Counted from the first letter of the stretch, positions 22,940 to 41,939 are shown. The stretch: 64,000 bases of DNA from IMGVR_UViG_3300027816_000052:124001-188000, one strand, 5' to 3'. Program-made: numbers and translations. The notes: generated from the sequence alone by a model not told the origin.

Positions 22940-23656
22940 ATGAAAAAGATTAAATTAACAGAATCAGATTTATATAGGATTGTTAGAAAGGTTCTTCTTG
23001 AGCAAGAGGAAGAAAATAACAGAAGAATTTTTAATGAGAATCCAGAATATTTTAAAACGATTCTTAAAAATGTATTTAAAAATGATTCTAAGAAATTAAC
23101 AAGGTTTTTTAATAAACAATACGATAAGGTTATTATTAATGGAAGTTTGAATTTAGAAGGAGCACCAATTCAATCCTTACCGGATAATCTTTATGTTGGG
23201 GAAAATTTGTATTTAAGTGAAACACCAATTCAATCCTTACCGGATAATCTTTATGTTGGGGGGGAGTTAGATTTATCTTATTGTGAAGAAATTGAAACTT
23301 TACCTGAAACTCTTGAAGTTAAGGGTAATATTGATTTATCCTATTCGTCAATAAAATATTTACCCGATAACTTTAAAGTACCAAAAAACCTATTTTTAGA
23401 TTATTCTAAATTAGAACATTTACCGGATAATCTCACGGTTGGAAATAATTTAATAGTAAGGAGCACACTTATAACAAAACTACCAAATAATTTAAAAGTT
23501 GGTGGTAAATTAAATATCCGCAATACAGAGGTGGAAGAATTACCTGATGATTTAGAAGTAAAATCTCTTATTTTAATAGATTTTACACCATTGTCTTATA
23601 ACTTAGATTTACAAAAGAAATACAAGGAAAAAGGTTTTATACTATATACCAATTAA
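22940..23656 (+). CDS. Leader-tagged leucine-rich-repeat protein LRR-1 (start revised to MKKIK)
   Basis: MKKIKLTESDLYRIVRKVLLEQ leader, then about 7 repeats of 20-21 aa (L.L..T.I..LPDNL.V). Confidence 0.85.
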   Translation: MKKIKLTESDLYRIVRKVLLEQEEENNRRIFNENPEYFKTILKNVFKNDSKKLTRFFNKQYDKVIINGSLNLEGAPIQSLPDNLYVGENLYLSETPIQSLPDNLYVGGELDLSYCEEIETLPETLEVKGNIDLSYSSIKYLPDNFKVPKNLFLDYSKLEHLPDNLTVGNNLIVRSTLITKLPNNLKVGGKLNIRNTEVEELPDDLEVKSLILIDFTPLSYNLDLQKKYKEKGFILYTN

Positions 23657-23721
23657 ATTATCTTATCACAATATGTTGTTTTTTATTGGTTTTTTCTTAT
23701 ATTTTAAGAAAATCTAATAAT

Positions 23722-24714
23722 ATGGCACTTAAGAAAAAAGAAATTACATTAGCGGATATTAAGAATAAATTTTCGACCAAAACAAAATATAAGGAAACCC
23801 AGTTTTATAATTGTGGTGAAGCGTTTTTGGATGCTTGTGGTTTACCGGGACCGGTGATGGGTTCTATAAATTTGTTTATGGGTCATTCAGACACGTCAAA
23901 ATCGACAGCAATGATTTTATCTGCGGTTGATGCACAAAGTAAGGGTCATTTACCCGTATTTATTATTACGGAGAAGAAATTCAGTTGGGAACATGCTATT
24001 GAATTGGGGTTGGACGCACAATTAGATTCAGATGGTTCTTATGTTGGTCAATTTATTTATAATGATTCATTTGATTATGTTGAACAAGCAACCGATTATA
24101 TTAATTCATTATTAGATGCACAAGAAAAGGGGGAGTTACCGTACAATCTATTATTTTGTTTCGACAGTATTGGTTCAATTCCTTGTTTGGCAACATACGA
24201 AGGAAAGGGTGGCGGCATGCATACGGCTAAGGTATTGGCGGATAAGATTGGCATGGGACTTCATTCTAGAATTACTAAATCTAGAAAAGAAGAATATCCG
24301 TATATAAATACTATGGTTGTAATCAACCAAGTTTGGATTGAAATTCCAGATAATCCATATAGTCAACCTGTAGCAAAACCTAAAGGTGGGGAAGCTTTAT
24401 TTTTTTCGGCAGCATTAGTATTTTTATTTGGTAATCATAAAAATTCTGGTGTATCGCACATTACTGCGACAAAAAATGGTAGAACGGTATCATTTGCTAC
24501 AAGAACTAAGATATCAATATTAAAGAATCACATTAATGGTATATCGTTTAAAGATGGTAAAATTATCGCAGTACCTCAAGGGTATATTAAAGACGATAAA
24601 GCAGACATTGATAAATATAAAAAGCAATATTCACAATATTGGAATAAAATATTAGGTGGTGGTGATGATGATATTAATTTAGAAGAAGGTAAAGATGAAT
24701 TATTTGAATCATAA
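23722..24714 (+). CDS. recA: RecA/UvsX-like recombinase
   Basis: P-loop GHSDTSKST, FITEKKF, Walker B FCFDSIGS, VINQVW, PKGGEALFF, KNHING. Confidence 0.85.
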   Translation: MALKKKEITLADIKNKFSTKTKYKETQFYNCGEAFLDACGLPGPVMGSINLFMGHSDTSKSTAMILSAVDAQSKGHLPVFIITEKKFSWEHAIELGLDAQLDSDGSYVGQFIYNDSFDYVEQATDYINSLLDAQEKGELPYNLLFCFDSIGSIPCLATYEGKGGGMHTAKVLADKIGMGLHSRITKSRKEEYPYINTMVVINQVWIEIPDNPYSQPVAKPKGGEALFFSAALVFLFGNHKNSGVSHITATKNGRTVSFATRTKISILKNHINGISFKDGKIIAVPQGYIKDDKADIDKYKKQYSQYWNKILGGGDDDINLEEGKDELFES

Positions 24715-24760
24715 TTTGTTAATAATAACAACTTTTTATAAAATCTAGATATTTATTAAT

Positions 24761-24919
24761 ATGGGAAGAAAGAAAATAACTAACGAAGAAAAAAAACAAA
24801 GTATTTCTATTGCTCTGAAACCGGAGTTATTAGAATATTTTCGCGGACTCCATATTAATCTTTCTTCTCTAATAAATAAATTATTAGAGGATTATAAAAA
24901 TGGAAAAGAAAATATGTAA
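24761..24919 (+). CDS. Small ribbon-helix-helix-like DNA-binding protein (52 aa), not in the ORF track
   Basis: Manual translation MGRKKITNEEKKQSISIALKPELLEYFRGLHINLSSLINKLLEDYKNGKENM; TATTTATT 4 nt upstream; overlaps the start of the next gene. Confidence 0.7.
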   Translation: MGRKKITNEEKKQSISIALKPELLEYFRGLHINLSSLINKLLEDYKNGKENM

Positions 24920-25934
24920 TAAATGTGGAATCGAAGCTCTTATATCGAACCAAGGAAAAGGTTTTTGTGAGACTTGTCGAGTTTTGGACATTAAAGAACA
25001 ACGAAGTCGTAAATATTTTGAAAAAAAAGAGCAAGAGAGGTTAGAGTTATTTTATAGGGATTGTCCGATTTGTGGGAAAGTAATAACCTATAAAACAAGT
25101 AATGGATGTTATAAAGCTAATAAAAAAAACACATCTTGTTTGACTTGTTGTAAAATGGGCGAAAAAAATCCTTTTTATGGTAAAATCCATACCGCTGAAA
25201 GTATGGATAGAATGAAGAAGACCACACTAGAAAGTGAAAAAAGAAAAGACTTTTGGAAAAGACAACAAACACAAGAATTTAGAGATAAATTAAGTGAAAC
25301 TTTAAAGATAAGACAACCAAATAAAGGTAAGGGTTATTATAAAGCGTGGATTAGAGATTATGGGTTAGAAGTTGCAAACCAAATGGTAAAAGAATTTGGT
25401 GATAGAATATCTAAAACAGCTAAAGGTAAACGCTTAGGGATACCACCAAAACACGGGATTGCATGTGGTAACGGATGGTCTGGTTGGTATAAAGAATATT
25501 TCTTTAGAAGTGTTGGTGAGTTAAGTTTTATAATAAATGTGATTGAGAGATTTGGATTTAATGCGATTTCGGCTGAAAGTCAGAAATATAAAGTGCGTTA
25601 TTTTATAGATGGTTTTGAAAGAAATTATTTTCCGGACTTTGTTTTAAATGATAAGTACGTAGTTGAATGTAAACCAAAAAAATTACAAGAAATACCTCAT
25701 AATAAAATTAAGTTTGATGCCGCTAAATTAAAATTCAAAGAAGATGGTTTAATCTTTAAGGTTGTTGACATTCCAATTATTGATTTTAATCTATTATTAG
25801 ATTTACATGATAAGGATTTAATAAAATTTTCTAAAAAAACAAATGAAAAATTTATGGTATACGTTGAAAAGAAAAAAGATATTAAATCTTTTATTGATAA
25901 AATATCTCAGAATATTACTAAACCTTTAACTTAA
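24900..25934 (+). mobile_element. Homing endonuclease with NUMOD3-like motif and TnsA-like PD-(D/E)xK domain
   Basis: Zn-finger CxxC pairs, GEKNPFYGKIHTAES, FRSVGELSF, RNYFPDFVLNDKYVVECKP. Confidence 0.75.
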
Positions 25935-25938
25935 TAAA

Positions 25939-26712
25939 ATGATTCTAAATTATAAAAAACCGCAACCACTTAATTTAGATTCTGTGGTCTTCGTACCAAT
26001 AAGAAAATGTCGAAAATGTGCTGAGATTAAACCGTATTCAGAATTTAGAAAAGAAAAAAATAGAAAATTTGGTATTAGACATATATGTAAAGAATGTAAT
26101 AACATTAGAATAAAAAAATTGAGAGAAAAAAATCCTGAAAAAGTAAGAGAACATGAGAAAAAATGGAGAGAAAAAAATCCTGAAAAAGTAAAGGAAAAAA
26201 ATAAAAGATGGATGAAAAAAAATCCTGAAAAAGCAAAGGAAAAGAATAAAATATGGAGAGAAAAAAATCCTGAAAAAAGAAATCTAATAAATAGAAGATA
26301 TTTAAATAAAAATTTAAATCAAATTATGGAAAGACGTAAAAAAAGAATGGATAAAAACCCCGAATATAAACTAAGAATACTTATGTCATATAGATTAAGT
26401 AAAATGTTTAAACAAAAAAAACTAGCAAAAAATAGCAAAACTCTAGAAATATTAGGAACATCATTTAATAATTTTAAATGTTATCTAGAATCTCAATTTA
26501 ATGACGGAATGACATGGGAAAATCATGGTAAGGTGTGGCAAATTGATCATAAGGTACCGGTATCATATGGAAAAAATGAAGAGGAAATATGTAAGCTAAA
26601 TCATTATACAAATCTTCAACCACTATTCACCTTAGAAAACCAAAAAAAAAGCGATAAACTCCTCCCAGAACACGAAGAGTTATATAAAAAGCTATTAAAT
26701 AGAGAGTTATAA
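25939..26712 (+). mobile_element. HNH-type homing endonuclease
   Basis: CRKC/CKEC, KNPEK repeats, MTWENHG..WQIDHKVP...NHYTNLQPL...NQKKSDK. Confidence 0.85.
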
Positions 26713-26739
26713 TTTTCAAAAAACAAAAAACAAAAAAAC

Positions 26740-27360: not shown

Positions 27361-27361
27361 C

Positions 27362-27559
27362 ATGAAACTCTATATTCACGAAGGACCGGGACATTGTGTT
27401 GGTAGTGTTGTTATCGTGGTTTCAGATAATTATGAAACCGCATATGAAATCATTTCAAAACGACTGGATGATATGGGATTAAACAAAGAGAATATTTCAA
27501 TTATAGAAAAAGAAATAATCAATAACGAGATTGTTTTTTCAAAAAGTGGTGATTATTAA
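27362..27559 (+). CDS. Hypothetical protein (65 aa)
   Basis: ORF coupled to the methyltransferase stop. Confidence 0.65.
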   Translation: MKLYIHEGPGHCVGSVVIVVSDNYETAYEIISKRLDDMGLNKENISIIEKEIINNEIVFSKSGDY

Positions 27560-28094
27560 TCTGGAAAATTAAAAAATAATAGGTAAACATCACCATCTCT
27601 AAAATCATCTGAAATTATTACACCATCCATTTCTTCCCAATTTTTTTTACTTAATCTATCAAATTTTGTAATAATTAAAGGTCTTTCTTCACCCCATTTT
27701 GTGGTAATAATTGTATTACCTTCATCATCAATTCCAGTTTTACCTCTTAACATGAAAGGTATTGGATAATCCATATACATTGACCCGTTTTCATAACCTT
27801 CATCTTTTAAATATTTTCTTGCGTTACCAATTGCGTCAAAGGTTTCTGTTGCGGTGAAAAATTTACTATAAACAATTACCCTATCACTTATTGCATAAAC
27901 ACCATTAATATTTGGAAAAACTTCACCAACCTTTTTACCAATAATATCATAAGCTGTTTCATCTTCTTTAAGAACTCGTTTAACTAAATTAATTAAGTCA
28001 GATTCCGTTAATCTTATTATTTTTTTCATAGTGTGTTATTTTAATGTAAATATCTTTAAAAGTAAAAAGCCAAAAAAGTGGTGATTATTAATCT
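27541..28094. repeat. 22-bp direct repeat AAAAAGTGGTGATTATTAATCT at 27541-27562 and 28073-28094
   Basis: Exact match read from the sequence; each copy contains the stop codon of a minus-strand cargo gene. Confidence 0.9.
27556..28029 (-). CDS. Leader-tagged protein of unknown function (157 aa)
   Basis: MKKIIRLTESDLINLVKRVLKE leader; body unrelated to the LRR genes. Confidence 0.8.
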   Translation of the reverse strand: MKKIIRLTESDLINLVKRVLKEDETAYDIIGKKVGEVFPNINGVYAISDRVIVYSKFFTATETFDAIGNARKYLKDEGYENGSMYMDYPIPFMLRGKTGIDDEGNTIITTKWGEERPLIITKFDRLSKKNWEEMDGVIISDDFRDGDVYLLFFNFPD

Positions 28095-28875
28095 CTACTA
28101 ATTCTATATTTTTCTTCATATTTCGCAACCAATTCATCATTATCTTTTAATGGTGTTTCACGAATATAAATTATCCCATTAACATAAAGATTATCCCCTA
28201 AGGATTTAATTGGTGTTCCATTTAACCACAAATCTCCCCCAACACGAAGATTATCCGGTAAGGATTGAATTGGTGTTTCAGTTAAATCCAACCTTCCCTC
28301 AACATGAAGATTATCCGGTAAGGATTGAATTGGTGTTCCTCGTAAATACAAACTTCCCCCAACATGAAGATTATCCGGTAAGGATTGAATTTGCGTTCCT
28401 TCTAAATCCAAATTTCCCTTAACGTCAAGATTATCCGGTAAGGATTGAATTGGTGTTCCATTTAACCACAAACTTCCCCCAACACGAAGATTATCCGGTA
28501 AGGATTGAATTTGTGTTCTTTGTAAATACAAACTTCCCCCAACACGAAGATTATCCGGTAAGGATTTAAGATTTTTGCATCCATATAAATTCAAATATCC
28601 CTCAACATGAAGATTATCCGGTAAGGATTGAATTTGTGTTTTTTCTAAATCCAAACCCCCATTAACAACAATCTCATCATATTTGTTATTAAGATGTTTA
28701 ACAAATCTTTCACCTGATGATGATGTTATAAAAGATGCAAATGCTCCCGGAGAAAATGTAAAACTTCTCTTTTCTTCCTCCTGTTCAAAAAGAACTTGTT
28801 TAATTATCCTATATAAATCTGATTCTGTTAATTTAATCTTTTTCATAACCATAAATATCATTAAAAGTAAAAAGC
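28047..28875. repeat. 24-bp direct repeat TAAATATC[T/A]TTAAAAGTAAAAAGC at 28047-28070 and 28852-28875
   Basis: One mismatch; each copy holds the TATTTA motif upstream of a minus-strand cargo gene. Confidence 0.9.
28088..28846 (-). CDS. Leader-tagged LRR protein LRR-2 (8 repeats plus cap)
   Basis: MKKIKLTESDLYRIIKQVLFEQ leader; G.L.L..T.IQSLPDNL.V repeats with 60/63-bp DNA period. Confidence 0.9.
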   Translation of the reverse strand: MKKIKLTESDLYRIIKQVLFEQEEEKRSFTFSPGAFASFITSSSGERFVKHLNNKYDEIVVNGGLDLEKTQIQSLPDNLHVEGYLNLYGCKNLKSLPDNLRVGGSLYLQRTQIQSLPDNLRVGGSLWLNGTPIQSLPDNLDVKGNLDLEGTQIQSLPDNLHVGGSLYLRGTPIQSLPDNLHVEGRLDLTETPIQSLPDNLRVGGDLWLNGTPIKSLGDNLYVNGIIYIRETPLKDNDELVAKYEEKYRISRD

Positions 28876-28933: not shown

Positions 28934-29482
28934 ATGAATCAAAGACGACTAATAAAAAAAATATTATTGGAATATACCAATGAGCAAAAAGATGAATATC
29001 AAGACATTGCGCTTGATAATTTATCAAAAATTGGTGATTTTAATAGATTACGTGAAATTGATAAATTAACGTTGCTTGGAAGAAGTGGTGACACACAAAA
29101 GCTAAAACGATTAATGTTATCAAGAATTTATGAAGAAAAGGGTAATACATTTGGAATGCTTGAAATAAAGGTTAAGATAAAGGATTTAAAGGAACAAGCG
29201 GTTAAAAGTAAATTTTCAGAAGAGTTTGCGGGTGAAGAGGGGTATTTACTTCCCTCTATACAGTATTTTGATGACATTCCCTATGTTAGTGTTAAATTTA
29301 AACGTTTTGAACCAAGCGATAAAGCACTTGGTGGTGGTAATTATGAAAGCAGAGTTATACCTCTAGCTAATGTCTATCCTTTGTCTTATGAAAAAATCGA
29401 CGATGAATTTGTTAAATATCAACAAAGAGTTGAAAGAGAAAGAAAAGAATTTAAAGATAGATTTGGACTTGATGAGTTTTGA
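28934..29482 (+). CDS. Hypothetical protein with leader-like N-terminus (RRLIKKILLEY)
   Basis: ORF preceded by ATGATATTTATGGTT, shared with the LRR genes. Confidence 0.75.
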   Translation: MNQRRLIKKILLEYTNEQKDEYQDIALDNLSKIGDFNRLREIDKLTLLGRSGDTQKLKRLMLSRIYEEKGNTFGMLEIKVKIKDLKEQAVKSKFSEEFAGEEGYLLPSIQYFDDIPYVSVKFKRFEPSDKALGGGNYESRVIPLANVYPLSYEKIDDEFVKYQQRVERERKEFKDRFGLDEF

Positions 29483-29511
29483 TTGTTATATTTTAGCAAA
29501 AATATAAAACA

Positions 29512-31457: not shown

Positions 31458-33908
31458 ATGGGTAAAGATAAAAATTTCGAGTATCTCGGACAAACATTTC
31501 AGCTTCAATTGATTAACCAAATTATCATTGACAAAATATTCGGCTCATCAATTATTGACGTTATGGAAGTCTCTTATTTCGAGAATAAGTATTTTAAAAT
31601 TGTTGTTCAATTTATTAAGGAACATTATGGAAAATATAATGAAATTCCTTCATTTACAACTTTAAAACAAATTATTAAATCTGAGTTAGCACAGGATTTT
31701 CTTGTAAAGGTTGCAATTGATACCTTGGAATCAATAAAAAATGTGTCAACTGACGGTGCTGAGTTTGTACAAGAAAAAGCTTTAAAGTTTTGTAAACAAC
31801 AAGAACTGAAAAAAGTAATGACTAAAGCACAAAAAATTATCGATGGTGGTGAATTTGAAAATTATGACCAAGTTGAATCTTTGGTTAGGAACGCACTTCA
31901 GGTTGGTGAATTGGATAAGGGTCAGATAGATGTTTTTGACGATACTGAGGGCGTTTTAAGTGAGGATTTCAGACATCCGATTGCGATGGGTATTAAGGGT
32001 ATTGATAAGCTCTTAAAGGGTGGTTTAGCGAGGGGTGAAATTGGTGTTATTCTCGCCCCGACAGGGGTGGGCAAAGCCCAAAATGTTAGTGAACCAATTT
32101 TAACACCAACAGGTTGGACCGAAATAGGAAATATTAAACTTGGTGATAAAATAATTGGTTCCGATGGTAATGAACAATATGTGATTGGCGTTTATCCGCA
32201 AGGTCAACGTCCAATTTATAAAATTGAATTTACTGATGATACACATACTTTTTGTGATGCAGAACATTTATGGTATGTTAATACATTAAACATGCGTACA
32301 AGAAAAACACGCATAAAAAATGTGAATAACTATGCTCCGAATTATGGGTATAAAGTGATTAAAACTAGCGATATGTTAGTTGATATAAAAAAACGAGGTA
32401 GATATAATTATAGACTACCTATTGTTAATCCTATTAATTTTAACGAAAAAGATATATTAATTAATCCTTATTTATTGGGTATTTTATTGGGGGATGGTTA
32501 TTTATCTGCAAAAGATAGTATTACTTTAAGTACTAAAGATGATGAAATATTTGATAATATTTCTAATTTAAATCTACACACATCATTTTCTGAATACCAT
32601 AGGGACACTAAAACAATTAAAGTTGTTCGCATTAAAAATGTTATTAAACCTCATTTAACTCATTATGGTTTACTTGGTATGAAATCTGACCAAAAGTTTA
32701 TACCGAAAGATTATATTTTTAATTCAGTAAATAATAGACTTGAATTATTGAGAGGATTAATGGATACTGATGGTTATGCGGATAAAAGAGGTTGTTGTCA
32801 ATTTACAACTGTTTCAGAACAATTAGCAAAAGATGTTAGAGAAATTGTTCTTTCTTTAGGTGGTACAGCTAAAATTAAAACAAAAATACCTAAATATAAG
32901 TATAAAGGTGAGGTAAAGGATGGTAAAATGGCTTATACTGTAACAATATCGTTTGCAAATAATATTGTTCCGTTTAAGTTGTTAAGAAAAGTAAATAGGT
33001 TCGTAAAAAGAAAAAAATATATTGAACAAAAATATATTAAATCAATAAACTATTCTCACGATGAAGAAGCTGTTTGCATAAAAGTATCAAATCCTGATGA
33101 ATTATATGTTACTAGAGATTATGTGTTAACACATAATACAACCGTAATGACAAAAATTGCAAATCACGCATATAATTTGGGTTTCAATGTCCTTCAAATC
33201 TTCTTTGAAGACAATCCAAAAATCATTCAGCGCAAGCATTTTACGATGTGGACCGGAATTAAACCCGATGATTTGACCGCAAATAAGGAAGAAGTTTTGG
33301 AAACGGTTAAAGAGTTGAGAAGTACCTTACCCAATAAATTGATTCTAAAGAAGTTACCTTCAGAATCATTAACCATGTCAAACATTAAAAATCAGGTAAG
33401 AAAAATAATTTCTGAGGGCGTTAAGATTGATTTAATTTGCTTGGATTATATCGATTGTGTATTACCAGAAAAATTCAATGGTGATGAATGGAAGGGTGAG
33501 GGTTCGGTTATCAGAGCATTTGAAGCAATGTGTCATGAATTGGATATTGTTGGATGGACCGCGACCCAAGGTAATCGATCCAGTATTTCAGCAGATGTTG
33601 TAACAACTGACCAAATGGGTGGTAGCATTAAAAAAGCACAAGTTGGTCACGTTATCATATCAATTGCTAAATCTCTTGAACAAAAAGACCAAAAACTTGC
33701 GACAATTGCAATTACAAAATCAAGAATTGGTTCTGATGGTGTGGTGTTTGCAAACTGCAAATTTGACAATGAAATGCTTATTATTGATACAGAGGAATCA
33801 AAAACATTATTAGGTCATGAAAAAGAGGTTGAAGAAATTAATGAAATGAATGCAAAAAAACGATTAGGTGAATTACAATCTAATAAAAAAAGAACAACAA
33901 TAAATTAA
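31458..33908 (+). CDS. dnaB: DnaB-like replicative helicase, intein-interrupted
   Basis: GGLARGEIGVILAPTGVGK|TT Walker A, CLDYIDC, WTATQGNR, IAITKSRIG. Confidence 0.9.
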   Translation: MGKDKNFEYLGQTFQLQLINQIIIDKIFGSSIIDVMEVSYFENKYFKIVVQFIKEHYGKYNEIPSFTTLKQIIKSELAQDFLVKVAIDTLESIKNVSTDGAEFVQEKALKFCKQQELKKVMTKAQKIIDGGEFENYDQVESLVRNALQVGELDKGQIDVFDDTEGVLSEDFRHPIAMGIKGIDKLLKGGLARGEIGVILAPTGVGKAQNVSEPILTPTGWTEIGNIKLGDKIIGSDGNEQYVIGVYPQGQRPIYKIEFTDDTHTFCDAEHLWYVNTLNMRTRKTRIKNVNNYAPNYGYKVIKTSDMLVDIKKRGRYNYRLPIVNPINFNEKDILINPYLLGILLGDGYLSAKDSITLSTKDDEIFDNISNLNLHTSFSEYHRDTKTIKVVRIKNVIKPHLTHYGLLGMKSDQKFIPKDYIFNSVNNRLELLRGLMDTDGYADKRGCCQFTTVSEQLAKDVREIVLSLGGTAKIKTKIPKYKYKGEVKDGKMAYTVTISFANNIVPFKLLRKVNRFVKRKKYIEQKYIKSINYSHDEEAVCIKVSNPDELYVTRDYVLTHNTTVMTKIANHAYNLGFNVLQIFFEDNPKIIQRKHFTMWTGIKPDDLTANKEEVLETVKELRSTLPNKLILKKLPSESLTMSNIKNQVRKIISEGVKIDLICLDYIDCVLPEKFNGDEWKGEGSVIRAFEAMCHELDIVGWTATQGNRSSISADVVTTDQMGGSIKKAQVGHVIISIAKSLEQKDQKLATIAITKSRIGSDGVVFANCKFDNEMLIIDTEESKTLLGHEKEVEEINEMNAKKRLGELQSNKKRTTIN
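32076..33137 (+). mobile_element. Ala-start (class 3-type) intein with LAGLIDADG endonuclease in the helicase Walker A (354 aa)
   Basis: Begins AQNVSEPILTPTGW, ends VLTHN, +1 Thr; EHLW, AVCIKV, LTHN give the WCT triad; LLGILLGDG and LLRGLMDTDG motifs. Confidence 0.9.
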
Positions 33909-33926: not shown

Positions 33927-36878
33927 ATGGACAGTAAATTTAAAGAAATTACCCCGCCTTGGGGTGAAATTGGTTATATAACATTTAAGAGAACATACGC
34001 TAGAAGATTAAAAGAAGATGACCCTTTGTCAAAAACTGAAGAGTTTTGGCAAGTAATTGAAAGAGAATTAGAGGCATCAGAAAAACAATTAAATGTTGGG
34101 TTTACAGAAGACGAGAAAAAAAGATATGCGGAATTACGCATGAACCTTAAGTTTTCAACTGCTGGTAGATTTATGTGGCAATTGGGGACTAAAACGGTTG
34201 ATAGATTAGGTTTACCATCTTTACAAAACTGTGCTTTTACCGTTGTTAATTCACCAATAAGACCATTTACTTGGTGTTTTGAAATGTTAATGTTAGGTAG
34301 CGGTGTTGGTTACAATATTCAAAAACATAATGTGTATCAATTACCAAAGTTGAAAAATAAAATTAAAATTGAAAGAAAAGACACAAATGATGCGGATTTT
34401 ATTGTTCCGGATAGCAGAGAAGGGTGGGTTAAACTTTTGGGTAAAGTACTTAAAGCACATTTTTATGGTGGTGAGGGTTTTACATATTCTACTGTTTGTA
34501 TTAGGTCTAAAGGTGCGGTAATAAAAGGGTTCGGGGGAACCGCATCTGGACCCGAAGATTTATGTTGGGGTATAAGTGAAATTAACAAAATATTAAATTC
34601 ACGCTCAAATAAAAAATTAAGACCTATTGATTGTCTTGATATTATGAATATTATCGGTAATATTGTGGTCGCCGGAAACGTCCGAAGATCGGCACAAATC
34701 GCAATTGGTGATTTTGATGATATTGAATTTTTAAAAGCAAAAAGATGGGATTTATATAAAATTCCAAACTGGAGAGCGATGAGTAATAATTCAATCGTTG
34801 CGCCAGAAAATATTGATGATTTACCTAAAGAATTTTGGGATACTTATAACCAAGGCGAACCATATGGATTGATTAATTTAGAATTAGCTAGAAGTGTTGG
34901 TAGAACTGGAGAAAATCAATATCCGGACCCTGAAGTTGAAGGATTTAATCCTTGCAAACCCTTAAATTCGCTTATTTTAACAAATAAGGGATATATTACG
35001 TTTGAACAAGCACTTAATGAGGATGAGCTTACCGTTTTAGGAATTGATGGTCAGTGGAAAAAAGCAACAAAACCATTTAAAACAGGGGAAAATAGGGTTG
35101 TGAATAGAATTTTATTGTCTAATGGTTCTTATCTATATGGTACCGATAATCATCTTCATATGGATAGAGATGGTAATTGGGTTAGAATGGATAAATTAGA
35201 AATTGGTAATCAATTAAAGTGGGAAAATAAACCAATATATACGTCTTTTGATATAGATAATGAAGAAGATTATAAATTAGGTACTTTCGCGGGATGGGTT
35301 CAGGGTGATGGATGGTATAGTAAACGATTAGATAATGTTGGTTATACGGTCGGTATGTGTTTTGGTATTAATGAAATGGATGTCGTTTCTTATTTTGAAC
35401 AAATGTTAAATGTAAAGACAAAACCTCATGAACAAAAACCAAACACATGTTTATATTTTTCATCGCATAGAAATGATTTATCAAAATCATTATCTGATAT
35501 TGGAATGCCAACTAATAAAATGGACTTAAAATGGTTGTATGGAAAATCTAAATCATTTAAACTTGGTTTTATTCGAGCTATTTTCACCGCTGACGGCTCA
35601 GTTAGAAAAATGAATAATGTTGAACTTTATTCTGTTAATAGAAATATTTTGGAAGTTGTTTCGACAATTTTAAACGAATTTGGTATTCATAATACAATAA
35701 CAACACATAATAATGGTCGAGTTTATGTTGGAAAAGATGGAAAAATGAGAAATAATTCCACATGTTTTAAAATTAATGTATATGCTGGTCAATTTAAACA
35801 GATTGGGTTTTTATCTAAATTTAAAAATGAGTTATTAGAAAAACATGAAATTAAACCGATTTATAGATACAAAGATTATGTTACAGTAATCGATATCGAA
35901 CCAGAATATTCGGTAGAGGATGTTTATGATATAACTGTCAATGATGAAACACACGCATTTTATGATACTGGGGTTGTAACACATAATTGTGCAGAACAAT
36001 CATTAGCTAATTTTGAGACCTGTTGTCTAGCTGAAGTTTATCTACCAAACATTGAAACATATGATCAATTATTGGAAGCCTTAACATATGCTTATAGAAT
36101 GAATAAACACTCATTGGCATTAAAATGTTCTTTAAAAGAAACTGAAGAAATTGTTAATCGAAATATGAGAATGGGTATTGGAATGACCGGTGTTTTACAG
36201 GCAACCGAAGAACAAAGGTCTTGGTTAAGTTCTGCATATGAATGGTTAAGAAAATATGATGTGGAATATTCAAAAAAACATGGTTTTCCAAATAGTATAA
36301 AACTTACCACTATTAAGCCATCCGGTACACTTTCGCTTTTAGCAGGAGTAACACCGGGAGTACATCCAAATCCTGCTGGACCGTATTATATTAGAAGAAT
36401 TAGAATTTCATCACAATCTACATTAATTGATGTATGTAGGAAACATGGATTTCCAATAGAATACCAAAGAAATTATGATGGTACTGAGGACAAAACCACA
36501 ATGGTAATATCTTTCCCATGTAAACTTCCGGATGAAACACCTGTAGCATCAAATTATACTTGGAAAGAACAATTAGATATGGTAAGAAGAATGCAAGCTG
36601 AATGGTCGGATAATTCGGTTAGCTGCACTGTTTATTATAAAAAAGAAGATATTGATGATATTAAAAATTACTTACGTGAACATTTTAAACATGAAATAAA
36701 AACTGTATCATTCCTTCTATATTATGGACATGGTTTTGATCAAGCACCATATGAAACAATAACAAAAGAACAATATGATGATATGATAAAAAATATTAAA
36801 CAAATAACATCTATTGAGGTTAAAGAAGATGAGTTTACAATTATGGATTGTGATACCGGTGCTTGTCCAATAAAATAA
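33927..36878 (+). CDS. nrdJ: Class II (B12-dependent) ribonucleotide reductase, intein-interrupted
   Basis: LQNCAF, GNVRRSAQI, NP|CAEQ, TCCLAE, TIKPSGTLSLL, C-terminal CDTGACPIK; monomeric RTPR-like layout. Confidence 0.9.
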   Translation: MDSKFKEITPPWGEIGYITFKRTYARRLKEDDPLSKTEEFWQVIERELEASEKQLNVGFTEDEKKRYAELRMNLKFSTAGRFMWQLGTKTVDRLGLPSLQNCAFTVVNSPIRPFTWCFEMLMLGSGVGYNIQKHNVYQLPKLKNKIKIERKDTNDADFIVPDSREGWVKLLGKVLKAHFYGGEGFTYSTVCIRSKGAVIKGFGGTASGPEDLCWGISEINKILNSRSNKKLRPIDCLDIMNIIGNIVVAGNVRRSAQIAIGDFDDIEFLKAKRWDLYKIPNWRAMSNNSIVAPENIDDLPKEFWDTYNQGEPYGLINLELARSVGRTGENQYPDPEVEGFNPCKPLNSLILTNKGYITFEQALNEDELTVLGIDGQWKKATKPFKTGENRVVNRILLSNGSYLYGTDNHLHMDRDGNWVRMDKLEIGNQLKWENKPIYTSFDIDNEEDYKLGTFAGWVQGDGWYSKRLDNVGYTVGMCFGINEMDVVSYFEQMLNVKTKPHEQKPNTCLYFSSHRNDLSKSLSDIGMPTNKMDLKWLYGKSKSFKLGFIRAIFTADGSVRKMNNVELYSVNRNILEVVSTILNEFGIHNTITTHNNGRVYVGKDGKMRNNSTCFKINVYAGQFKQIGFLSKFKNELLEKHEIKPIYRYKDYVTVIDIEPEYSVEDVYDITVNDETHAFYDTGVVTHNCAEQSLANFETCCLAEVYLPNIETYDQLLEALTYAYRMNKHSLALKCSLKETEEIVNRNMRMGIGMTGVLQATEEQRSWLSSAYEWLRKYDVEYSKKHGFPNSIKLTTIKPSGTLSLLAGVTPGVHPNPAGPYYIRRIRISSQSTLIDVCRKHGFPIEYQRNYDGTEDKTTMVISFPCKLPDETPVASNYTWKEQLDMVRRMQAEWSDNSVSCTVYYKKEDIDDIKNYLREHFKHEIKTVSFLLYYGHGFDQAPYETITKEQYDDMIKNIKQITSIEVKEDEFTIMDCDTGACPIK
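34953..35987 (+). mobile_element. Class 1 intein with LAGLIDADG endonuclease at the RNR NP|C catalytic site (345 aa)
   Basis: Begins CKPLNSLILTNKG, ends VVTHN, +1 Cys; GTDNH block B; GWVQGDG and RAIFTADG motifs. Confidence 0.92.
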
Positions 36879-36936: not shown

Positions 36937-37146
36937 ATGAAAAACGATTGGATAACAGAACAATACATTAAAGAAACATTGCAAAATAAAGATTCTGATT
37001 TTTATGTCAATTCGGATGGTAAAAAAGTTATGACCGAAAATTTTCATAAAAAACGAGGTTATTGTTGTGGTTCCGGTTGTTTACATTGTCCTTATGAACC
37101 AAGAGCGCAAAAAGGAAATACAAAATTAAAAAATCCCCAATCATAA
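36937..37146 (+). CDS. Small Cys-rich protein (DUF5522-like)
   Basis: DFYVNSDGKKVMTENFHKKRGYCCGSGCLHCPY. Confidence 0.75.
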   Translation: MKNDWITEQYIKETLQNKDSDFYVNSDGKKVMTENFHKKRGYCCGSGCLHCPYEPRAQKGNTKLKNPQS

Positions 37147-37160
37147 GTTGGGGATTTTTT
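37128..37160. terminator. Bidirectional terminator between convergent genes
   Basis: AAAAATCCCCAA-TCATAAG-TTGGGGATTTTT perfect inverted repeat with A/T tails on both sides. Confidence 0.85.
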
Positions 37161-37165
37161 TAATT

Positions 37166-38302
37166 TTATACATAAAACCTATAACCCTTTACCTGATATT
37201 TCAAAATCAAATCAATATCATTATTTAACGGAGTTCCACCGATTGAAATAACACCTACAACCTTAAGATTATCCGGTAAGGATTGAATTGGTGTTCCTAC
37301 TAAACTCAAATCTCCCCCAACATGAAGATTATCCGGTAAGGATTTAAGATTTTTGCATCCATATAAATTCAAATTTCCCCCAACATGAAGATTATCCGGC
37401 AAGGATTGGATTGGTGTATCATATAACTCCAAATTTTTCTTAACATGAAGATTATCCGGTAAGGATTTAATTGGTGTTTCATTTAACCACAAATCTCCCC
37501 CAACATGAAGATTATCCGGTAAGGATTGAATTGGTGTTCCTACTAAACTCAAATCTCCCCCAACATGAAGATTATCCGGTAAGGATTTAAGATTTTTGCA
37601 TCCATATAAATTCAAATTTCCCCCAACATGAAGATTATCCGGCAAGGATTGGATTGGTGTATCATATAACTCCAAATTTTTCTTAACATGAAGATTATCC
37701 GGTAAGGATTTAATTGGTGTTTCATTTAACCACAAATCTCCCCCAACATGAAGATTATCCGGTAAGGATTGAATTGGTGTTCCTACTAAACTCAAATCTC
37801 CCCCAACATGAAGATTATCCGGTAAGGATTGAATTGGTGTTCCTACTAAACTCAAATTTCCCCCAACATGAAGATTATCCGGTAAGGATTGAATTGGTGT
37901 TCCTACTAAACTCAAACTTCCCCCAACACGAAGATTATCCGGTAAGGATTGAATTGGTGTTCCTCTTAAATACAAACTTCCCCCAACATGAAGATTATCC
38001 GGTAAGGATTGAATTGGTGTTCCTTGTAAATACAAACTTCCCCCAACATGAAGATTATCCGGTAATGATTGAATTTGTGTATCTCTTAAATCCAAATCCC
38101 CATTAATAATAACCTTATCATATTGTTTATTAAAAACTCTTGTTAATTTCTCAGAATCATTTCTAAATACATTTTCAAGAATCGTTTTAAAATATTCTGG
38201 ATTCTTATTGAAGATTCTTCTGTTATTTTCTTCCTCTTGCTCAAGAAGAACCTTTCTAACAATCCTATATAAATCTGATTCTGTTAATTTAATCTTTTTC
38301 AT
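37166..38302 (-). CDS. Leader-tagged LRR protein LRR-3 (14 repeats plus cap)
   Basis: Leader almost identical to LRR-1; 14 units of 20-21 aa. Confidence 0.9.
   Translation of the reverse strand: MKKIKLTESDLYRIVRKVLLEQEEENNRRIFNKNPEYFKTILENVFRNDSEKLTRVFNKQYDKVIINGDLDLRDTQIQSLPDNLHVGGSLYLQGTPIQSLPDNLHVGGSLYLRGTPIQSLPDNLRVGGSLSLVGTPIQSLPDNLHVGGNLSLVGTPIQSLPDNLHVGGDLSLVGTPIQSLPDNLHVGGDLWLNETPIKSLPDNLHVKKNLELYDTPIQSLPDNLHVGGNLNLYGCKNLKSLPDNLHVGGDLSLVGTPIQSLPDNLHVGGDLWLNETPIKSLPDNLHVKKNLELYDTPIQSLPDNLHVGGNLNLYGCKNLKSLPDNLHVGGDLSLVGTPIQSLPDNLKVVGVISIGGTPLNNDIDLILKYQVKGYRFYV
37265..38100. repeat. Coding tandem repeat, 60/63-bp unit, with an exact 243-bp higher-order duplication
   Basis: Core AAGATTATCCGGTAAGGATT; identical blocks begin at 37265, 37508 and 37751. 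Confidence 0.92.
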
Positions 38303-38374
38303 AACCATAAATATTATACCATTTCTAAAAATTGTTATTCTACTATATTTATTGTTAACGAATCACTATTTTAA

Positions 38375-38836: not shown

Positions 38837-38844
38837 TTATTAAA

Positions 38845-40683
38845 ATGGCAGAAAGAAGAATAAATTATACCGATAGAGATTTTGTTGCAATAAGACAAGA
38901 TTTAATTAATTATGTTAATACGTATTATCCCGACTTAATTAGCAATTTTAATGATGCTTCGGTATTTTCTGTTTTAATGGATTTAAATGCTGCTGTCACA
39001 GATAACTTACATTTTCATATTGATAGAAGCATACAAGAAACGGTATTACAGTATGCGCAACAAAAATCATCAGTTTTTAATATCGCAAGAACTTACGGAT
39101 TAAAAATACCGGGTCAAAGACCTTCTGTTGCGCTCGTTGATTTTTCAATTACGGTTCCAGTTTTTGGTGATAAAGAAGATGAAAGATATTTGGGAATATT
39201 AAGAAGGGGAAGTCAGGTATCGGGTGCGGGACAAATTTTTGAAACCGTTCACGATATTGATTTTGCGTCACCTTTTAATAATGAAGGGTTCCCAAACAGA
39301 TTAAAAATTCCAAATTTTGATGCAAACAATATTCTTATAAATTATACCATAGTTAAAAGAGATGTTGTTGTTAATGGTATCACAAAGGTGTTCAAAAAAG
39401 TTATAACAAATGCTGATGTTAGACCATTTCTTGACTTATTTTTACCAGAAAAGAATGTTTTGGGTGTTACATCGGTTATTCAAAAAGATGGTGTATCATA
39501 TGCTAATGTTCCTTCAGTACAAGAATTTCTTGGTACTTCAGGAAGATGGTATGAAGTTGATGCTCTTGTTGAAGATAGAATTTTTATCGAAGACCCAACA
39601 AAACCATCAGACCAACCCGGAATTAAGGTTGGAAAATACATAACAACAAATCAACGATTTATAACAGAATTTACCCCTCAAGGATTTTTGAAAATGACAT
39701 TTGGTGGTGGTAATGTAAGTGCTGAAGAGCAACTTAGGGAGTTTACCAGATTAGGAACTCCGCTTAATATACAAAAATATCAAAATAATATGGCGTTAGG
39801 TTCCGCACTAAAACCTAACACAACATTATTTGTTCAATATCGAGTTGGTGGCGGTTTATCAACGAATTTAGGTGTTAACGTAATCACACAAGTTAATACA
39901 GCAAATTTTGCGGTTAACGGTCCATCACAAAGTGTTAATACCTCAGTTATAAATTCATTAAGATGTTCAAACGTTACCGCAGCTATTGGTGGAGCAAATG
40001 CACCAACATTAGAAGAGGTTAGGAATTATGTTTCATTTAATTTTTCCGCACAAAATAGAGCGGTAACAATAAGCGATTATGAAGCATTAATTAGAAAAAT
40101 GCCGGGACAATTTGGCGCACCAGCAAAAGTTGCAATTGTTGAGGAAGATAATAAAATTAAGGTTAAAATATTATCATTTGATTCTTCGGGTAAATTAACA
40201 CAAATAGTTTCAAATACATTAAAAAATAATTTAGCTAATTATTTATCGAACTATAGAATGATAAATGATTATGTTTCAATTGAAACCGCTGAAGTTATTG
40301 ATTTAACTGTTGATGTTTCAGTTGTTTTAGATGCAACACAAAATCAAGGTGCGGTTGTTTCTGATATTATTAATACAATAACAACTTATTTTAATCCTTT
40401 AACAAGACAACTTGGTGAAAATGCTTATATATCCGAAATAAGAAGATTGATTCAATCATTAAATGGCGTTATTACAATAACATCATTGGATTTCTTTAAT
40501 AAGGTAGGCGGACAATATTCATCAGCAGAAACATCTCAACCCTATTTGGATAACAACACCAAACAAATTCAACCGATTGATGATACACTTTTTGCAGAAC
40601 CAAAACAAATTTATCAAATTAGATATCCTCAAAAAGATATTACGGTAAGGGTTAAGAATTTTAAAGGTGTTAGCTTTTCATAA
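38845..40683 (+). CDS. gp6-like baseplate wedge protein (baseplate J family)
   Basis: YTDRDF..IRQDL, FGGG, YRVGGG, QNRAVTISDY. Confidence 0.9.
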   Translation: MAERRINYTDRDFVAIRQDLINYVNTYYPDLISNFNDASVFSVLMDLNAAVTDNLHFHIDRSIQETVLQYAQQKSSVFNIARTYGLKIPGQRPSVALVDFSITVPVFGDKEDERYLGILRRGSQVSGAGQIFETVHDIDFASPFNNEGFPNRLKIPNFDANNILINYTIVKRDVVVNGITKVFKKVITNADVRPFLDLFLPEKNVLGVTSVIQKDGVSYANVPSVQEFLGTSGRWYEVDALVEDRIFIEDPTKPSDQPGIKVGKYITTNQRFITEFTPQGFLKMTFGGGNVSAEEQLREFTRLGTPLNIQKYQNNMALGSALKPNTTLFVQYRVGGGLSTNLGVNVITQVNTANFAVNGPSQSVNTSVINSLRCSNVTAAIGGANAPTLEEVRNYVSFNFSAQNRAVTISDYEALIRKMPGQFGAPAKVAIVEEDNKIKVKILSFDSSGKLTQIVSNTLKNNLANYLSNYRMINDYVSIETAEVIDLTVDVSVVLDATQNQGAVVSDIINTITTYFNPLTRQLGENAYISEIRRLIQSLNGVITITSLDFFNKVGGQYSSAETSQPYLDNNTKQIQPIDDTLFAEPKQIYQIRYPQKDITVRVKNFKGVSFS

Positions 40684-40740
40684 TTTATATGTTGAATTAA
40701 AAATAAAATAAAATTTTTTAAAAAAAATCAATCTTTTTTT

Positions 40741-40771
40741 TTTGGATATATTTATCAAATAGGTAATTTTG
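40741..40771 (+). promoter_or_regulatory. Bacteroidota sigmaA-type promoter (TTTG-N19-TAATTTTG) with an internal TATTTATC motif
   Basis: Exact consensus spacing; TATTTATC at 40749 lies in the spacer. Confidence 0.65.
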
Positions 40772-40827
40772 CAAATATCAGTCATATTACTTATTTTTGA
40801 TAAATAAACAATTAATACAATTAAAAT

Positions 40828-41178
40828 ATGAATTTTAAAATTTCTAAAACCGAAAAACAAGCTATTTTGGAAATGTACCAAAATAAAAAAAATATTAATG
40901 AACTTATTGGTATTAAACCGGGTCCGGAATCCTCTACTGAGGATTCGTTCCAAGAATATTTAGAGATTGGTTCCACAGTTGCAAACCAGATTAATGGATT
41001 TTTTCCATTATGGGATGTTACTAAAAACAATCAGTTTATTGGTAGAATACAAATGACATTTGGTATATTTACATTTGTAAATAAAGATTTTGAACCCCGT
41101 AATTCTAAAAACGATAAAAGAATTAAAATGGCATCCTTAGAAAAATTAGTAAAATATATTGATGAAAATTATAACTAA
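40828..41178 (+). CDS. Hypothetical protein (116 aa) with a distantly leader-like N-terminus
   Basis: MNFKISKTEKQAILEMY. Confidence 0.75.
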   Translation: MNFKISKTEKQAILEMYQNKKNINELIGIKPGPESSTEDSFQEYLEIGSTVANQINGFFPLWDVTKNNQFIGRIQMTFGIFTFVNKDFEPRNSKNDKRIKMASLEKLVKYIDENYN

Positions 41179-41180
41179 AA

Positions 41181-41939
41181 ATGAAAATTATAATAACAGA
41201 AAGTCAACTTAAATATTTATATAATTTAACTGAAAGTGGTGGCATTACGTCAAAATCTAGAGTATGGACACCTATTGTTATGAAATTTTTAGATACTGAG
41301 GAAGATAAGATTATAATTTTGGGTAAAGATTACCCAGAACAATATAAAGATTTTCCAATTGATAAAATGGTTGTTACTTTAAATGGAATACCACATTATG
41401 ATGAACAAAAATCAGGTTATGATAAAAAAACAGGTTTATATACCGTTTATATAACAATTAATAGTAGCGTTTCTTTTATCCAACATGAATTTAAACACGC
41501 ATATCAAGACTTAATGCGTTATTTAAATAAATCAAAACCATTTAAAGAAAGTAATTTTATTAAAGATTTATATACACCAGATTTTGAAAAATTTGTAATA
41601 AATGTTTTTGGTGGTTCAGATAATACACTAGAATTAATTTTATATTATTATTACATTACTTCAAAAGTTGAACAAGACGCTTATTTAGAAAATATGTATG
41701 ATGACAGTGAAACACTAAATTCATTTATTAAAGATTTAAATGAAATAAATAACTTTGATTTTAATAAAAATTTATCAGAAAAAAAATGGAACGAAATAAA
41801 GAGTTCTAATATTCCATTTATTAAAAAATTTAAATCAAAGGAAGATTTTGCATCTTATAGCGAAAAACGAATCAAAGGTGAAATAAACAACTTTAAAAAG
41901 AAAATTTATAAAATGAAGGTGGTTCATAATTTAAAATGA
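41181..41939 (+). CDS. Leader-tagged protein with HExxH motif (possible zinc metallopeptidase)
   Basis: MKIIITESQLKYL leader; IQHEFKHAYQD and downstream EQDAY. Confidence 0.7.
   Translation: MKIIITESQLKYLYNLTESGGITSKSRVWTPIVMKFLDTEEDKIIILGKDYPEQYKDFPIDKMVVTLNGIPHYDEQKSGYDKKTGLYTVYITINSSVSFIQHEFKHAYQDLMRYLNKSKPFKESNFIKDLYTPDFEKFVINVFGGSDNTLELILYYYYITSKVEQDAYLENMYDDSETLNSFIKDLNEINNFDFNKNLSEKKWNEIKSSNIPFIKKFKSKEDFASYSEKRIKGEINNFKKKIYKMKVVHNLK

What the first reader, a model, noticed from the sequence alone, without database searches (positions are those of the whole stretch)
22940..41939. Shared N-terminal leader on unrelated late-expressed cargo genes: candidate capsid-packaging and injection system
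Seen: five ORFs with different bodies begin with the same leader: MKKIKLTESDLYRIVRKVLLE (22940, 38302), MKKIKLTESDLYRIIKQVLFE (28846), MKKIIRLTESDLINLVKRVLKE (28029) and MKIIITESQLKYLYNLTE (41181). Weaker versions occur at 28934 (LIKKILLE) and 40828 (KISKTEKQAILE). The cargo bodies are LRR arrays, an HExxH protein and unknown folds. Nearly all have their own TATTTA(T) motif and interrupt core gene runs. Established: T4 internal proteins carry a short N-terminal capsid-targeting sequence removed by gp21 protease after hydrophobic-X-Glu. Each leader here ends in L-x-E. Inference: the leader is a portable tag that loads diverse effectors into the head for injection with the DNA, for example anti-defence or host-takeover cargo.
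Basis: partly seen in the sequence, partly recalled or inferred. Interest (0 to 1): 0.85.

Follow-up and report, generated by a model that had tools for sequence, protein, structure and literature searches.

The report
Portable leader peptide on phage proteins
A 20-residue peptide that begins five genes of this large T4-like water phage also begins thousands of unrelated proteins in uncultured phages but almost none in cells, and it ends in the cutting site of the phage's head protease, so it is most likely a removable tag that loads proteins into the phage head, which would let injected phage proteins be read from sequence alone.

Summary
Five genes (22940+, 28029-, 28846-, 38302-, 41181+) start with one leader; a profile scores them 24-31 bits against 1.6 for the next ORF. 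Three of the five are LRR paralogues, so the window holds three bodies, not five. It heads 91 unrelated body clusters in the fetched viral loci and about 9,000 protein clusters in 1.84 billion representatives. A DNA pattern for it hit cellular genomes once in 596 Gb. Selection acts on the amino acids. The long form ends in [L/I]-x-Glu at one fixed position in 92% of cases, then conservation collapses. That is the T4 gp21 cleavage motif, and this phage lineage encodes a gp21-family (S77) protease, a T4-type portal and a Gp23 capsid protein. The TATTTAT element before the leader genes also precedes the protease, scaffold and tail genes. In orthologues, leader forms swap while the junction Glu never changes. 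The capsid-tag reading is therefore the best explanation (about 0.5) but is unproven. Some tagged bodies are ordinary enzymes, bodies are not basic, and no virion data exist. It looks like a new, much expanded variant of the T4 capsid-targeting principle.

The parts
22940..23656 (+). LRR protein 1 (238 aa); leader = codons 1-21 (22940-23002)
   Evidence: It lies between the gp32-like SSB gene and a RecA/UvsX-sized gene.
27556..28029 (-). 157-aa protein of unknown fold; long-form leader = codons 1-22 (28029-27964)
   Evidence: Orthologues carry long, short or other N-termini.
28088..28846 (-). LRR protein 2 (252 aa); leader 28846-28784
37166..38302 (-). LRR protein 3 (378 aa); leader 38302-38240. 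The body holds 13.6 copies of a 60-nt repeat and is a FlrP-type LRR.
41181..41939 (+). 252-aa HExxH protein; short-form leader = codons 1-18 (41181-41234), ending LTE then SGG
28934..29482 (+). 182-aa protein with a possible 'half leader' (residues 5-13, LIKKILLE)
   Evidence: Not found by the profile. It has the same form as the half leader of HExxH-family orthologues.
40828..41178 (+). 116-aa ORF; the claimed weak leader is not supported. It belongs to the same insertion as the HExxH gene.
22929..22935 (+). TATTTAT promoter-like element 11 nt before the LRR1 start
28851..28857 (-). TATTTAT 11 nt before the LRR2 start
38307..38313 (-). TATTTAT 11 nt before the LRR3 start
28047..28052 (-). TATTTA(C) 23 nt before the 157-aa gene. 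Its upstream flank is shared with LRR2.
22884..22917 (+). Terminator-like hairpin plus T run directly before the LRR1 promoter element
37128..37160 (.). Two-way terminator-like hairpin at the 3' end of LRR3
40688..42128 (+). Insertion, absent from a 93%-identical relative, that holds ORF 40828, the HExxH gene and a 64-aa ORF
   Evidence: L008

Best explanation
The leader is a removable address tag for the phage head. It works like the capsid-targeting sequence of T4 internal proteins but belongs to a different and far larger sequence family.

Shown: it is an 18-22-residue N-terminal module made of a short hydrophobic start (MKKIIRL or MKIII), a TE-x-(D/Q)-L helix cap and a basic amphipathic helix. 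It ends at [L/I]-x-Glu and is followed by a polar, disordered linker.

Inferred: late in infection the tag binds the prohead core, perhaps the very acidic scaffold protein, so that whatever protein it carries is built into the prohead. The gp21-family (S77) head protease then cuts after the Glu. This frees the body inside the head, and the body leaves with the DNA at the next infection.

In this window the cargo would be three LRR binding proteins, a 157-aa protein and an HExxH protein.
For: (1) The cleavage-type ending is fixed. Among 142 long-form leaders picked by their N-terminal half only, Glu is at +14 in 136 and [LI]-x-E at +12..+14 in 131. Position +12 is L or I in 134. Control N-termini have [LI]-x-E anywhere in residues 8-30 in 37% of cases. 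Conservation collapses right after the Glu.
(2) T4 gp21 cuts after L/I-X-E and removes propeptides of 7-65 residues that target proteins to the core (PMC9026906). T4 IPII and IPIII start MKTYQEFIAE then A; IPI has a 19-residue start ending ITE then A.
(3) The window's phage lineage encodes Peptidase_S77, Portal_T4 and Gp23. Its protease and capsid protein carry ILIE, IIKE-S and LINE-A at the positions expected for T4-like maturation sites.
(4) In 22 orthologues of the HExxH protein the leader is long, short or half, yet E18 and G21 are invariant. The same pattern is seen in the 157-aa family.
(5) TATTTAT precedes the leader genes and also the protease, scaffold, a head gene, tail tube and baseplate genes. 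It mostly does not precede replication genes.
(6) AlphaFold leaves the leader unpacked, with pLDDT about 50 next to a body at 86.
(7) Chains with two or three leader copies exist, one before each module, as expected for protease-processed chains.
(8) The leader is specific to viruses: a DNA pattern gave 1 hit in 596 Gb of cellular genomes against more than 120 in viral contigs.
(9) Several bodies would be useful at entry: lysozyme+LysM, peptidoglycan-binding domains and a SAM-lyase family protein.
Against: There are no virion proteomics, no cleavage data and no cultured phage with the canonical leader. tblastn of leaders against 50,697 phage records found nothing.

Some tagged bodies are ordinary cytoplasmic enzymes: tRNA nucleotidyltransferase, HD, pterin-4a-carbinolamine dehydratase and nucleoside 2-deoxyribosyltransferase.

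The number is very large: about 9,000 clusters, and up to 6 genes per 12-14 kb.

Bodies are not basic (median pI 5.7), and the window's LRR and 157-aa bodies are acidic, unlike T4 internal proteins.

In 80 capsid-centred loci of the same clade only 4 leader genes occur in 741 kb. Leader genes lie between protease and capsid gene in only one sublineage.

The leader has no sequence similarity to the T4 tag. [L/I]-x-E is short, and E-rich helices make it common.
Confidence: 0.5

Rival explanations
1. The leader is a docking or pairing helix that stays on the mature protein. It gathers many different phage proteins on a common partner other than the prohead, such as a phage-built compartment, a chaperone or a hub, or it joins tagged proteins to each other.
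For: Housekeeping-type enzymes carry it. In L128 the head domain and the HD domain of a CCA-adding enzyme are separate ORFs, each with a leader, and a pairing helix could bring them together. Internal copies in multi-module chains would also work as docking helices. It is an amphipathic helix with one hydrophobic face. Its density and family number are high.
Against: This does not explain why the module must end in an invariant Glu preceded by L/I at one fixed position, followed by a disordered linker. It also does not explain the link to the late TATTTAT element. No candidate partner was found.
Confidence: 0.2
2. The leader is a processing signal only. The head protease or another Glu-specific protease cuts it to split multi-module chains or to switch proteins on late, and the bodies are not packaged.
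For: The [L/I]-x-E ending is fixed. Chains with two or three leaders exist. An S77 protease is present. This reading fits enzyme bodies that need not be in virions.
Against: gp21-family proteases are known to act inside the prohead (PMC9026906), so substrates must get there. The conserved 12-14 residues before the cut site are more than a cut site needs.
Confidence: 0.12
3. The conserved unit is really a gene-start cassette: terminator, TATTTAT and a start codon 11-12 nt later, giving a message with almost no untranslated leader. It serves expression and the swapping of gene bodies by recombination, and the peptide is a by-product or only aids early translation.
For: TATTTA sits 11-12 nt before the ATG in 63 leader genes and is often preceded by a hairpin and T run. 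Ile codons 3-4 depend on whether that element is present (6/63 vs 54/85 ATA-ATA, p = 9e-12). The 5' codons are A-rich. The LRR paralogues share identical DNA over promoter and leader. P0187 and P0192 share module 1 and the internal leader but differ after it.
Against: Synonymous codons vary freely: three Ile codons, four Thr codons and both Ser codon families. Conservation runs to residue 22. About half of the leader genes have no such promoter. Internal leader copies are kept far from any start codon.
Confidence: 0.08

Closest known systems
Capsid targeting sequence (CTS) of T4 internal proteins IPI, IPII, IPIII, removed by the gp21 prohead protease
   Same: It is a short N-terminal peptide starting MK and ending [L/I]-x-Glu plus a small residue. 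It sits on proteins with unrelated bodies in plastic genome regions. A gp21-family protease is present in the same phage. T4 IPI's propeptide is 19 residues, similar in length (PMC9026906, PMC3012670).
   Different: There is no sequence similarity: the leader profile scores T4 IPs below 0 bits. It is usually 18-22 residues rather than 10 and comes in long, short and half forms. It heads thousands of families including enzymes, not a handful of small basic proteins. It also occurs inside chains. Packaging and cleavage are not shown here.
N-terminal propeptides of head and ejection proteins of giant phages (PhiKZ, 201phi2-1, SPN3US), cut by gp21-like proteases
   Same: These are large phages with many head proteins, paralogue families, cleavage after x-Glu and some short propeptides of 20 and 24 residues (PMC10052503).
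   Different: Their motif is A/S/G-x-E and most propeptides are 111-254 residues. No shared portable leader sequence is reported for them. Here the P3 residue is L/I as in T4.
Cargo-loading peptides of encapsulins
   Same: A short portable peptide directs unrelated cargo into an HK97-fold shell (own knowledge).
   Different: They are usually C-terminal, are not cleaved, are cellular and have an unrelated sequence. Not tested here.
Mobile promoter/stem-loop cassettes (PeSL) that flank small genes in plastic regions of T4-type phages (own knowledge, Arbiol et al. 2010)
   Same: A hairpin plus promoter unit stands before many small accessory genes, and bodies appear to be shuffled at a conserved junction.
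   Different: PeSLs are non-coding early-promoter units. Here the conserved part is a peptide under amino-acid selection, and the promoter element is shared with morphogenesis genes.
Polyvalent proteins of phages and plasmids (PMC5512222)
   Same: They are multi-module chains thought to be delivered with the DNA. There are weak structural hints between the HExxH body and polyvalent-protein-associated domains.
   Different: The hints are below significance (E 0.018, TM 0.27). The proteins here are mostly single modules, each with its own leader.

Membership tests
T4-type capsid-targeting propeptide (functional class) | N-terminal peptide shared by proteins with unrelated bodies | tested here: met
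   There are 3 bodies in the window, 91 body clusters in fetched loci and 8,985 representative clusters for the long form.
T4-type capsid-targeting propeptide (functional class) | Ends in the prohead protease motif L/I-x-Glu | tested here: met
   131 of 142 long-form leaders have it at one fixed position. The junction Glu is invariant in 22 orthologues.
T4-type capsid-targeting propeptide (functional class) | Same phage encodes a gp21-family (S77) prohead protease | tested here: met
   L255:16210-16932 is Peptidase_S77 and lies beside Portal_T4 and Gp23, on a contig that shares exact proteins with the window. The L013 protease is also S77.
T4-type capsid-targeting propeptide (functional class) | Made late, together with prohead proteins | tested here: inconclusive
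   The TATTTAT element is shared with protease, scaffold, tail tube and baseplate genes. There are no expression data.
T4-type capsid-targeting propeptide (functional class) | Protein present in virions with the leader removed; the leader is enough to load a foreign protein | not testable with these tools
   No cultured host-phage pair or proteome was found.
T4 CTS sequence family (MKTYQEFIAE-like) | Sequence similarity to T4 IP N-termini | tested here: not met
   The leader profile scores T4 IPI, IPII and IPIII below 0 bits.
Leucine-rich repeat proteins (FlrP-type, 20-residue repeat) | Tandem LRR units with sequence match to a solved LRR solenoid | tested here: met
   PDB 8z5u scores E 2e-30 over 163 residues. 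The DNA repeat is 60 nt, 13.6 copies.
Zincin metallopeptidases (for the HExxH body) | HExxH with a downstream Glu, conserved in the family | tested here: met
   H102, E103, H106, E164 and E170 are invariant in 22 sequences.
Zincin metallopeptidases (for the HExxH body) | Zincin fold or profile match | tested here: not met
   Pfam gave no match. The PDB profile search found nothing. Foldseek's best PDB hit has E 0.05 and TM 0.15 for a model of pLDDT 86.
Secretion signal peptides (Sec/Tat) | Uncharged hydrophobic core of about 8 or more residues after a basic start | tested here: not met
   Read from the sequence. The consensus has 7 K/R and 3 D/E in 22 residues and no uncharged stretch longer than 3. 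No predictor was run.

The most novel reading that the evidence does not exclude
The leader is not a capsid tag but a general sorting code of infected cells. It would be one peptide label, used by a large group of aquatic T4-like and jumbo phages, that sends thousands of different proteins, enzymes included, to a so-far unknown phage-made structure or hub. The Glu-specific cut would serve as the release step.
Probability: 0.15. Interest if true: 0.9.

Novelty: new variant of a known kind. Interest (0 to 1): 0.72.

Why it matters
If the tag loads proteins into heads, one short profile would list the injected proteins of thousands of uncultured phages directly from metagenomes. That would be a ready catalogue of candidate entry enzymes, anti-defence proteins and host-takeover factors, most of them of unknown fold. 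It would also show that the T4 capsid-targeting principle, so far known from a few internal proteins of T-even phages, is a major organising rule of phage accessory genomes. The tag might serve as a packaging handle for engineering phages beyond T4. If the tag does something else, a virus-only label on about 9,000 protein clusters is an unexplained feature of phage biology worth solving. Either way the question can be tested with one protease, one fusion protein and one virion proteome.

Tried and rejected
- Chance or AT-rich bias: rejected. There is a profile score gap in the window. A DNA pattern gave one hit in 596 Gb of cellular genomes against more than 120 viral hits.
- Nucleotide-level conservation alone: rejected by free synonymous variation.
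- Known families: Pfam and PHROGs give nothing for the leader, the 157-aa body or the HExxH body.
- Literature: searches for six-letter motif strings found no biology paper, and a concept search found none describing such a leader.
- Cultured phages: tblastn of leaders against 50,697 phage records found nothing. The nearest cultured relative, Flavobacterium phage immuto, has only faint look-alikes such as MKKSQLRQIIKE. Its homologue of one leader family lacks the canonical leader.
- 'Leader genes mark the prohead-core slot': six fetched loci (likely about four phages, since some share a leader sequence) have two or three leader genes between protease and scaffold. An unbiased set of 80 capsid-centred loci showed this in 1 of 54, so it is a sublineage insertion and I do not count it as evidence.
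- 'Cargo should be basic like T4 internal proteins': not found.
- AlphaFold of the 157-aa protein was too poor to use (pLDDT 62).
- Fold searches of the HExxH model found only uncharacterised phage proteins.
- Finding the head genes took eight walking steps, six of them blank, before searches found them.
Full report
OBSERVATION. I built a profile from 98 non-redundant leaders collected elsewhere. It scores the five at 31.0, 31.0, 29.5, 28.5 and 23.8 bits, and the next best N-terminus of any ORF in the window scores 1.6. Three of the five (22940+, 28846-, 38302-) are paralogous LRR proteins. They share about 70 N-terminal residues and an identical 56-nt stretch that runs from the promoter-like element into the leader. 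The window therefore shows three bodies, not five. The LRR assignment is solid: PDB 8z5u (the Vibrio protein FlrP) scores E 2e-30, and the arrays are 60-nt tandem repeats. The 157-aa body and the 252-aa HExxH body match no Pfam, PHROG or PDB family.

THE PHAGE. The window is positions 124001-188000 of a 256-kb viral contig, IMGVR_UViG_3300027816_000052. G+C is about 30%. The window carries the following genes:
- a tail tube and a baseplate hub;
- gp25-like and gp6-like wedge proteins;
- a gp32-like SSB;
- a DnaB-like helicase and a class II ribonucleotide reductase, each with a LAGLIDADG intein.
The nearest cultured phage is Flavobacterium phage immuto, at 27% identity in the gp6-like protein. 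After a walk along contigs that carry exactly the same proteins, I found the head genes of this lineage. Their order is terminase, Portal_T4 with an intein, two small genes, Peptidase_S77 (the T4 gp21 family), a 71-aa gene, a very acidic 515-aa scaffold-like protein and a Gp23-family capsid protein. The phage carries at least 12 leader genes spread over the whole contig.

ANATOMY OF THE LEADER. There are two main forms.
- The long form has the consensus MKKIIRLTESDL-x-RIVKRVL-x-E. Taking the T of the TE pair as position 0, positions 0, 1, 4, 7, 8, 11, 12 and 14 are nearly fixed.
- The short form is MKIIITE-x-Q-(L/F/Y)-xx-(L/I)-x-E.
Both forms occur in the same loci. A third, 'half' form (MK-x-LIKKIL-x-E) lacks the TESDL part. 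In an alignment of 22 orthologues of the HExxH protein, all three forms replace each other. Glu18 and Gly21 at the junction (for example LTE-SGG, LKE-SAG) never change. The 157-aa family behaves the same way. I then selected 142 long-form leaders by their first half only. Glu is at +14 in 136 of them, and [L/I]-x-E sits at +12 to +14 in 131. Ordinary N-termini from the same loci have such a triplet anywhere in residues 8-30 in 37% of cases. Directly after the Glu, conservation collapses into polar and acidic residues. AlphaFold leaves the leader as a low-confidence helix that does not pack on the body: pLDDT is about 50 for the leader against 86 for the HExxH body. Codon choice shows that the peptide is what is selected. 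All three Ile codons, four Thr codons and both Ser codon families are used, with only a mild excess of A-rich codons.

DISTRIBUTION. A degenerate DNA pattern for MKKIxLTESDL found 40 stretches in IMG/VR. The second pattern found one match in 596 Gb of bacterial and archaeal genomes, on a 9.6-kb contig of an archaeal MAG. In the fetched loci, 266 complete leader proteins fall into 91 body clusters, with up to six leader genes in 12-14 kb. A 30-column profile of the long form was searched against 1.84 billion representative proteins. It found 8,985 clusters at E <= 0.001 and 832 at E <= 1e-10. Many of these are gene fragments, so the number of true families is lower. All named sources are metagenomes. 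The leader profile found no canonical leader in the two stretches of phage immuto scanned (about 92 kb of its 160-kb genome). tblastn of two leaders against 50,697 deposited phage records found nothing.

BODIES. Beyond the window, tagged bodies include:
- phage lysozyme plus LysM, and peptidoglycan-binding domains;
- a DUF3293 / SAM-lyase family protein;
- a nucleoside 2-deoxyribosyltransferase;
- a tRNA nucleotidyltransferase head domain and an HD domain, encoded as separate ORFs each with its own leader;
- a pterin-4a-carbinolamine dehydratase;
- many proteins of 27-826 residues with no match.
Some chains carry two or three leader copies, one before each module. P0187 and P0192 share the first module and the internal leader but differ after it.

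EXPRESSION SIGNALS. In the window, sense-strand TATTTA lies 8-45 nt before 22 gene starts. A uniform spread would give 3.3, and the antisense control gives 5. The motif precedes the tail tube gene, the gp25-like gene, several large structural genes, the three LRR genes and (as TATTTAC) the 157-aa gene. It mostly does not precede replication genes. In the head module it precedes the protease, the scaffold-like gene and another head gene. Across all fetched phages, 50% of 181 non-redundant leader genes have TATTTAT upstream, against 24% of 1,299 other genes. The motif sits sharply at -11/-12, often just after a hairpin with a T run. Such units would give messages with almost no untranslated leader. 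Ile codons 3-4 are ATA-ATA in 6 of 63 genes with this arrangement and in 54 of 85 without it (p = 9e-12, not corrected for relatedness). A sigma-70-family factor is encoded in the same lineage. Whether it reads TATTTAT is untested.

HOW IT MOST LIKELY WORKS. T4 gp21 cuts after L/I-X-Glu. The N-terminal propeptides of T4 internal proteins target them to the prohead core and are then removed. Reviewers have suggested that such tags let T4-like phages load varied proteins into their heads (PMC9026906, PMC3012670). Read from the T4 record, T4 IPII and IPIII begin MKTYQEFIAE followed by A, and IPI has a 19-residue start ending ITE followed by A. The leader here has the same logic:
- it starts MK;
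- it ends in L/I-x-Glu at a fixed place;
- a flexible linker follows;
- it sits on unrelated bodies;
- it shares a promoter element with morphogenesis genes;
- a gp21-family protease is encoded in the same phage.
The lineage's own protease and capsid protein carry ILIE, IIKE-S and LINE-A where T4-like maturation sites are expected, and these are conserved in about 50 relatives. The steps 'binds the core', 'is cut' and 'is injected' are inferences. The net charge of about +4 on the long leader and the strongly acidic scaffold suggest a partner, but nothing more than that.

WHAT SPEAKS AGAINST IT. Ordinary enzymes carry the tag. Bodies are not basic: median pI is 5.7 against 6.2 for other ORFs, and the window's LRR and 157-aa bodies have pI 4.5-5.4. 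The family is very large. Six fetched loci (likely about four phages, since some share a leader sequence) have two or three leader genes between protease and scaffold, which at first looked like strong support. An unbiased sample of 80 capsid-centred loci showed this in only 1 of 54, and only 4 leader genes in 741 kb, so I discount it. The rivals are a retained docking helix, a processing-only signal and an expression and shuffling cassette. Each explains part of the data but not the fixed Glu, the internal copies or the amino-acid selection taken together.

COMPARISON AND NOVELTY. Functionally the closest thing is the T4 capsid-targeting sequence. As a sequence family the leader is unrelated to it, longer, multiform, also found inside chains, and expanded by orders of magnitude. 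I found no description of it in Pfam, PHROGs or the searchable literature. I rate it a new variant of a known kind, with about 0.5 confidence in the mechanism.

LIMITS. There is no experimental evidence of any kind. The 'virus-only' statement rests on one DNA pattern for the short form. The head module was read from a relative contig that shares exact proteins with the window's contig, not from the window itself.

Noticed in passing
window 31458-33908 and 33927-36878; L255:11783-14923; L171:10691-12511: LAGLIDADG inteins interrupt the DnaB-like helicase and the class II ribonucleotide reductase. In the same phage lineage the T4-type portal gene carries an intein signal and PhoH carries a LAGLIDADG domain.
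   Followed up: partly
window 4811-6388: A 525-aa homing-endonuclease-like gene (phrog_3339 at 9e-118, DUF7487) sits between the tail tube and baseplate hub genes.
   Followed up: partly
window 37166-38302; L003:3501; L028:26; L255:2391-2967: The LRR gene at this locus has 378, 297, 337 or 192 residues in genomes that are otherwise more than 99% identical. The 60-nt repeat array therefore expands and contracts quickly.
   Followed up: partly
window 37166-38302 (body): The phage LRR repeats are of the same class as Vibrio FlrP (PDB 8z5u), a periplasmic LRR protein bound to the flagellar rod. The phage proteins have the leader where FlrP has a Sec signal.
   Followed up: partly
L167:14802-15602: The same phage lineage encodes a sigma-70-family factor (regions 2 and 4). 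It is a candidate reader of the TATTTAT elements, which do not resemble the usual sigma-70 consensus (promoter-like sigma-70 sites are at chance, 121 vs 118).
   Followed up: no
all fetched leader loci (L003-L160) and the window: Ile codons 3-4 of MKII... leaders are ATT/ATC when TATTTA lies 11-12 nt upstream and ATA-ATA when it does not (6/63 vs 54/85, p = 9e-12). This is a nucleotide-level constraint laid over the peptide. It is not corrected for relatedness.
   Followed up: partly
L128:5088-6263 and L128:6275-6793: A CCA-adding enzyme is split into a nucleotidyltransferase ORF and an HD ORF, each with its own leader. A pterin dehydratase with a leader lies nearby.
   Followed up: partly
proteins P0184, P0185, P0187, P0188, P0192, P0251, P0177: Single chains carry two or three leader copies, one in front of each module. 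Related chains share module 1 and the internal leader but have different second modules.
   Followed up: partly
window 25939-26712 (repeat 26113-26277): A 45-nt tandem repeat encodes a repeated KEKNPEK-type peptide in an HNH-like protein next to a NUMOD3-containing protein (24900-25934).
   Followed up: no
window 61985-62806; L164:13698-16334; window 54873-57005: Sulfotransferase-domain, RCC1-repeat and SprB-repeat proteins lie among the very large tail-fibre-region genes.
   Followed up: no
L013:11228-11407: A further leader variant, MKTILLTESELIYLIE, heads a 59-aa basic protein in a head module. It starts MKT like the T4 tag.
   Followed up: no
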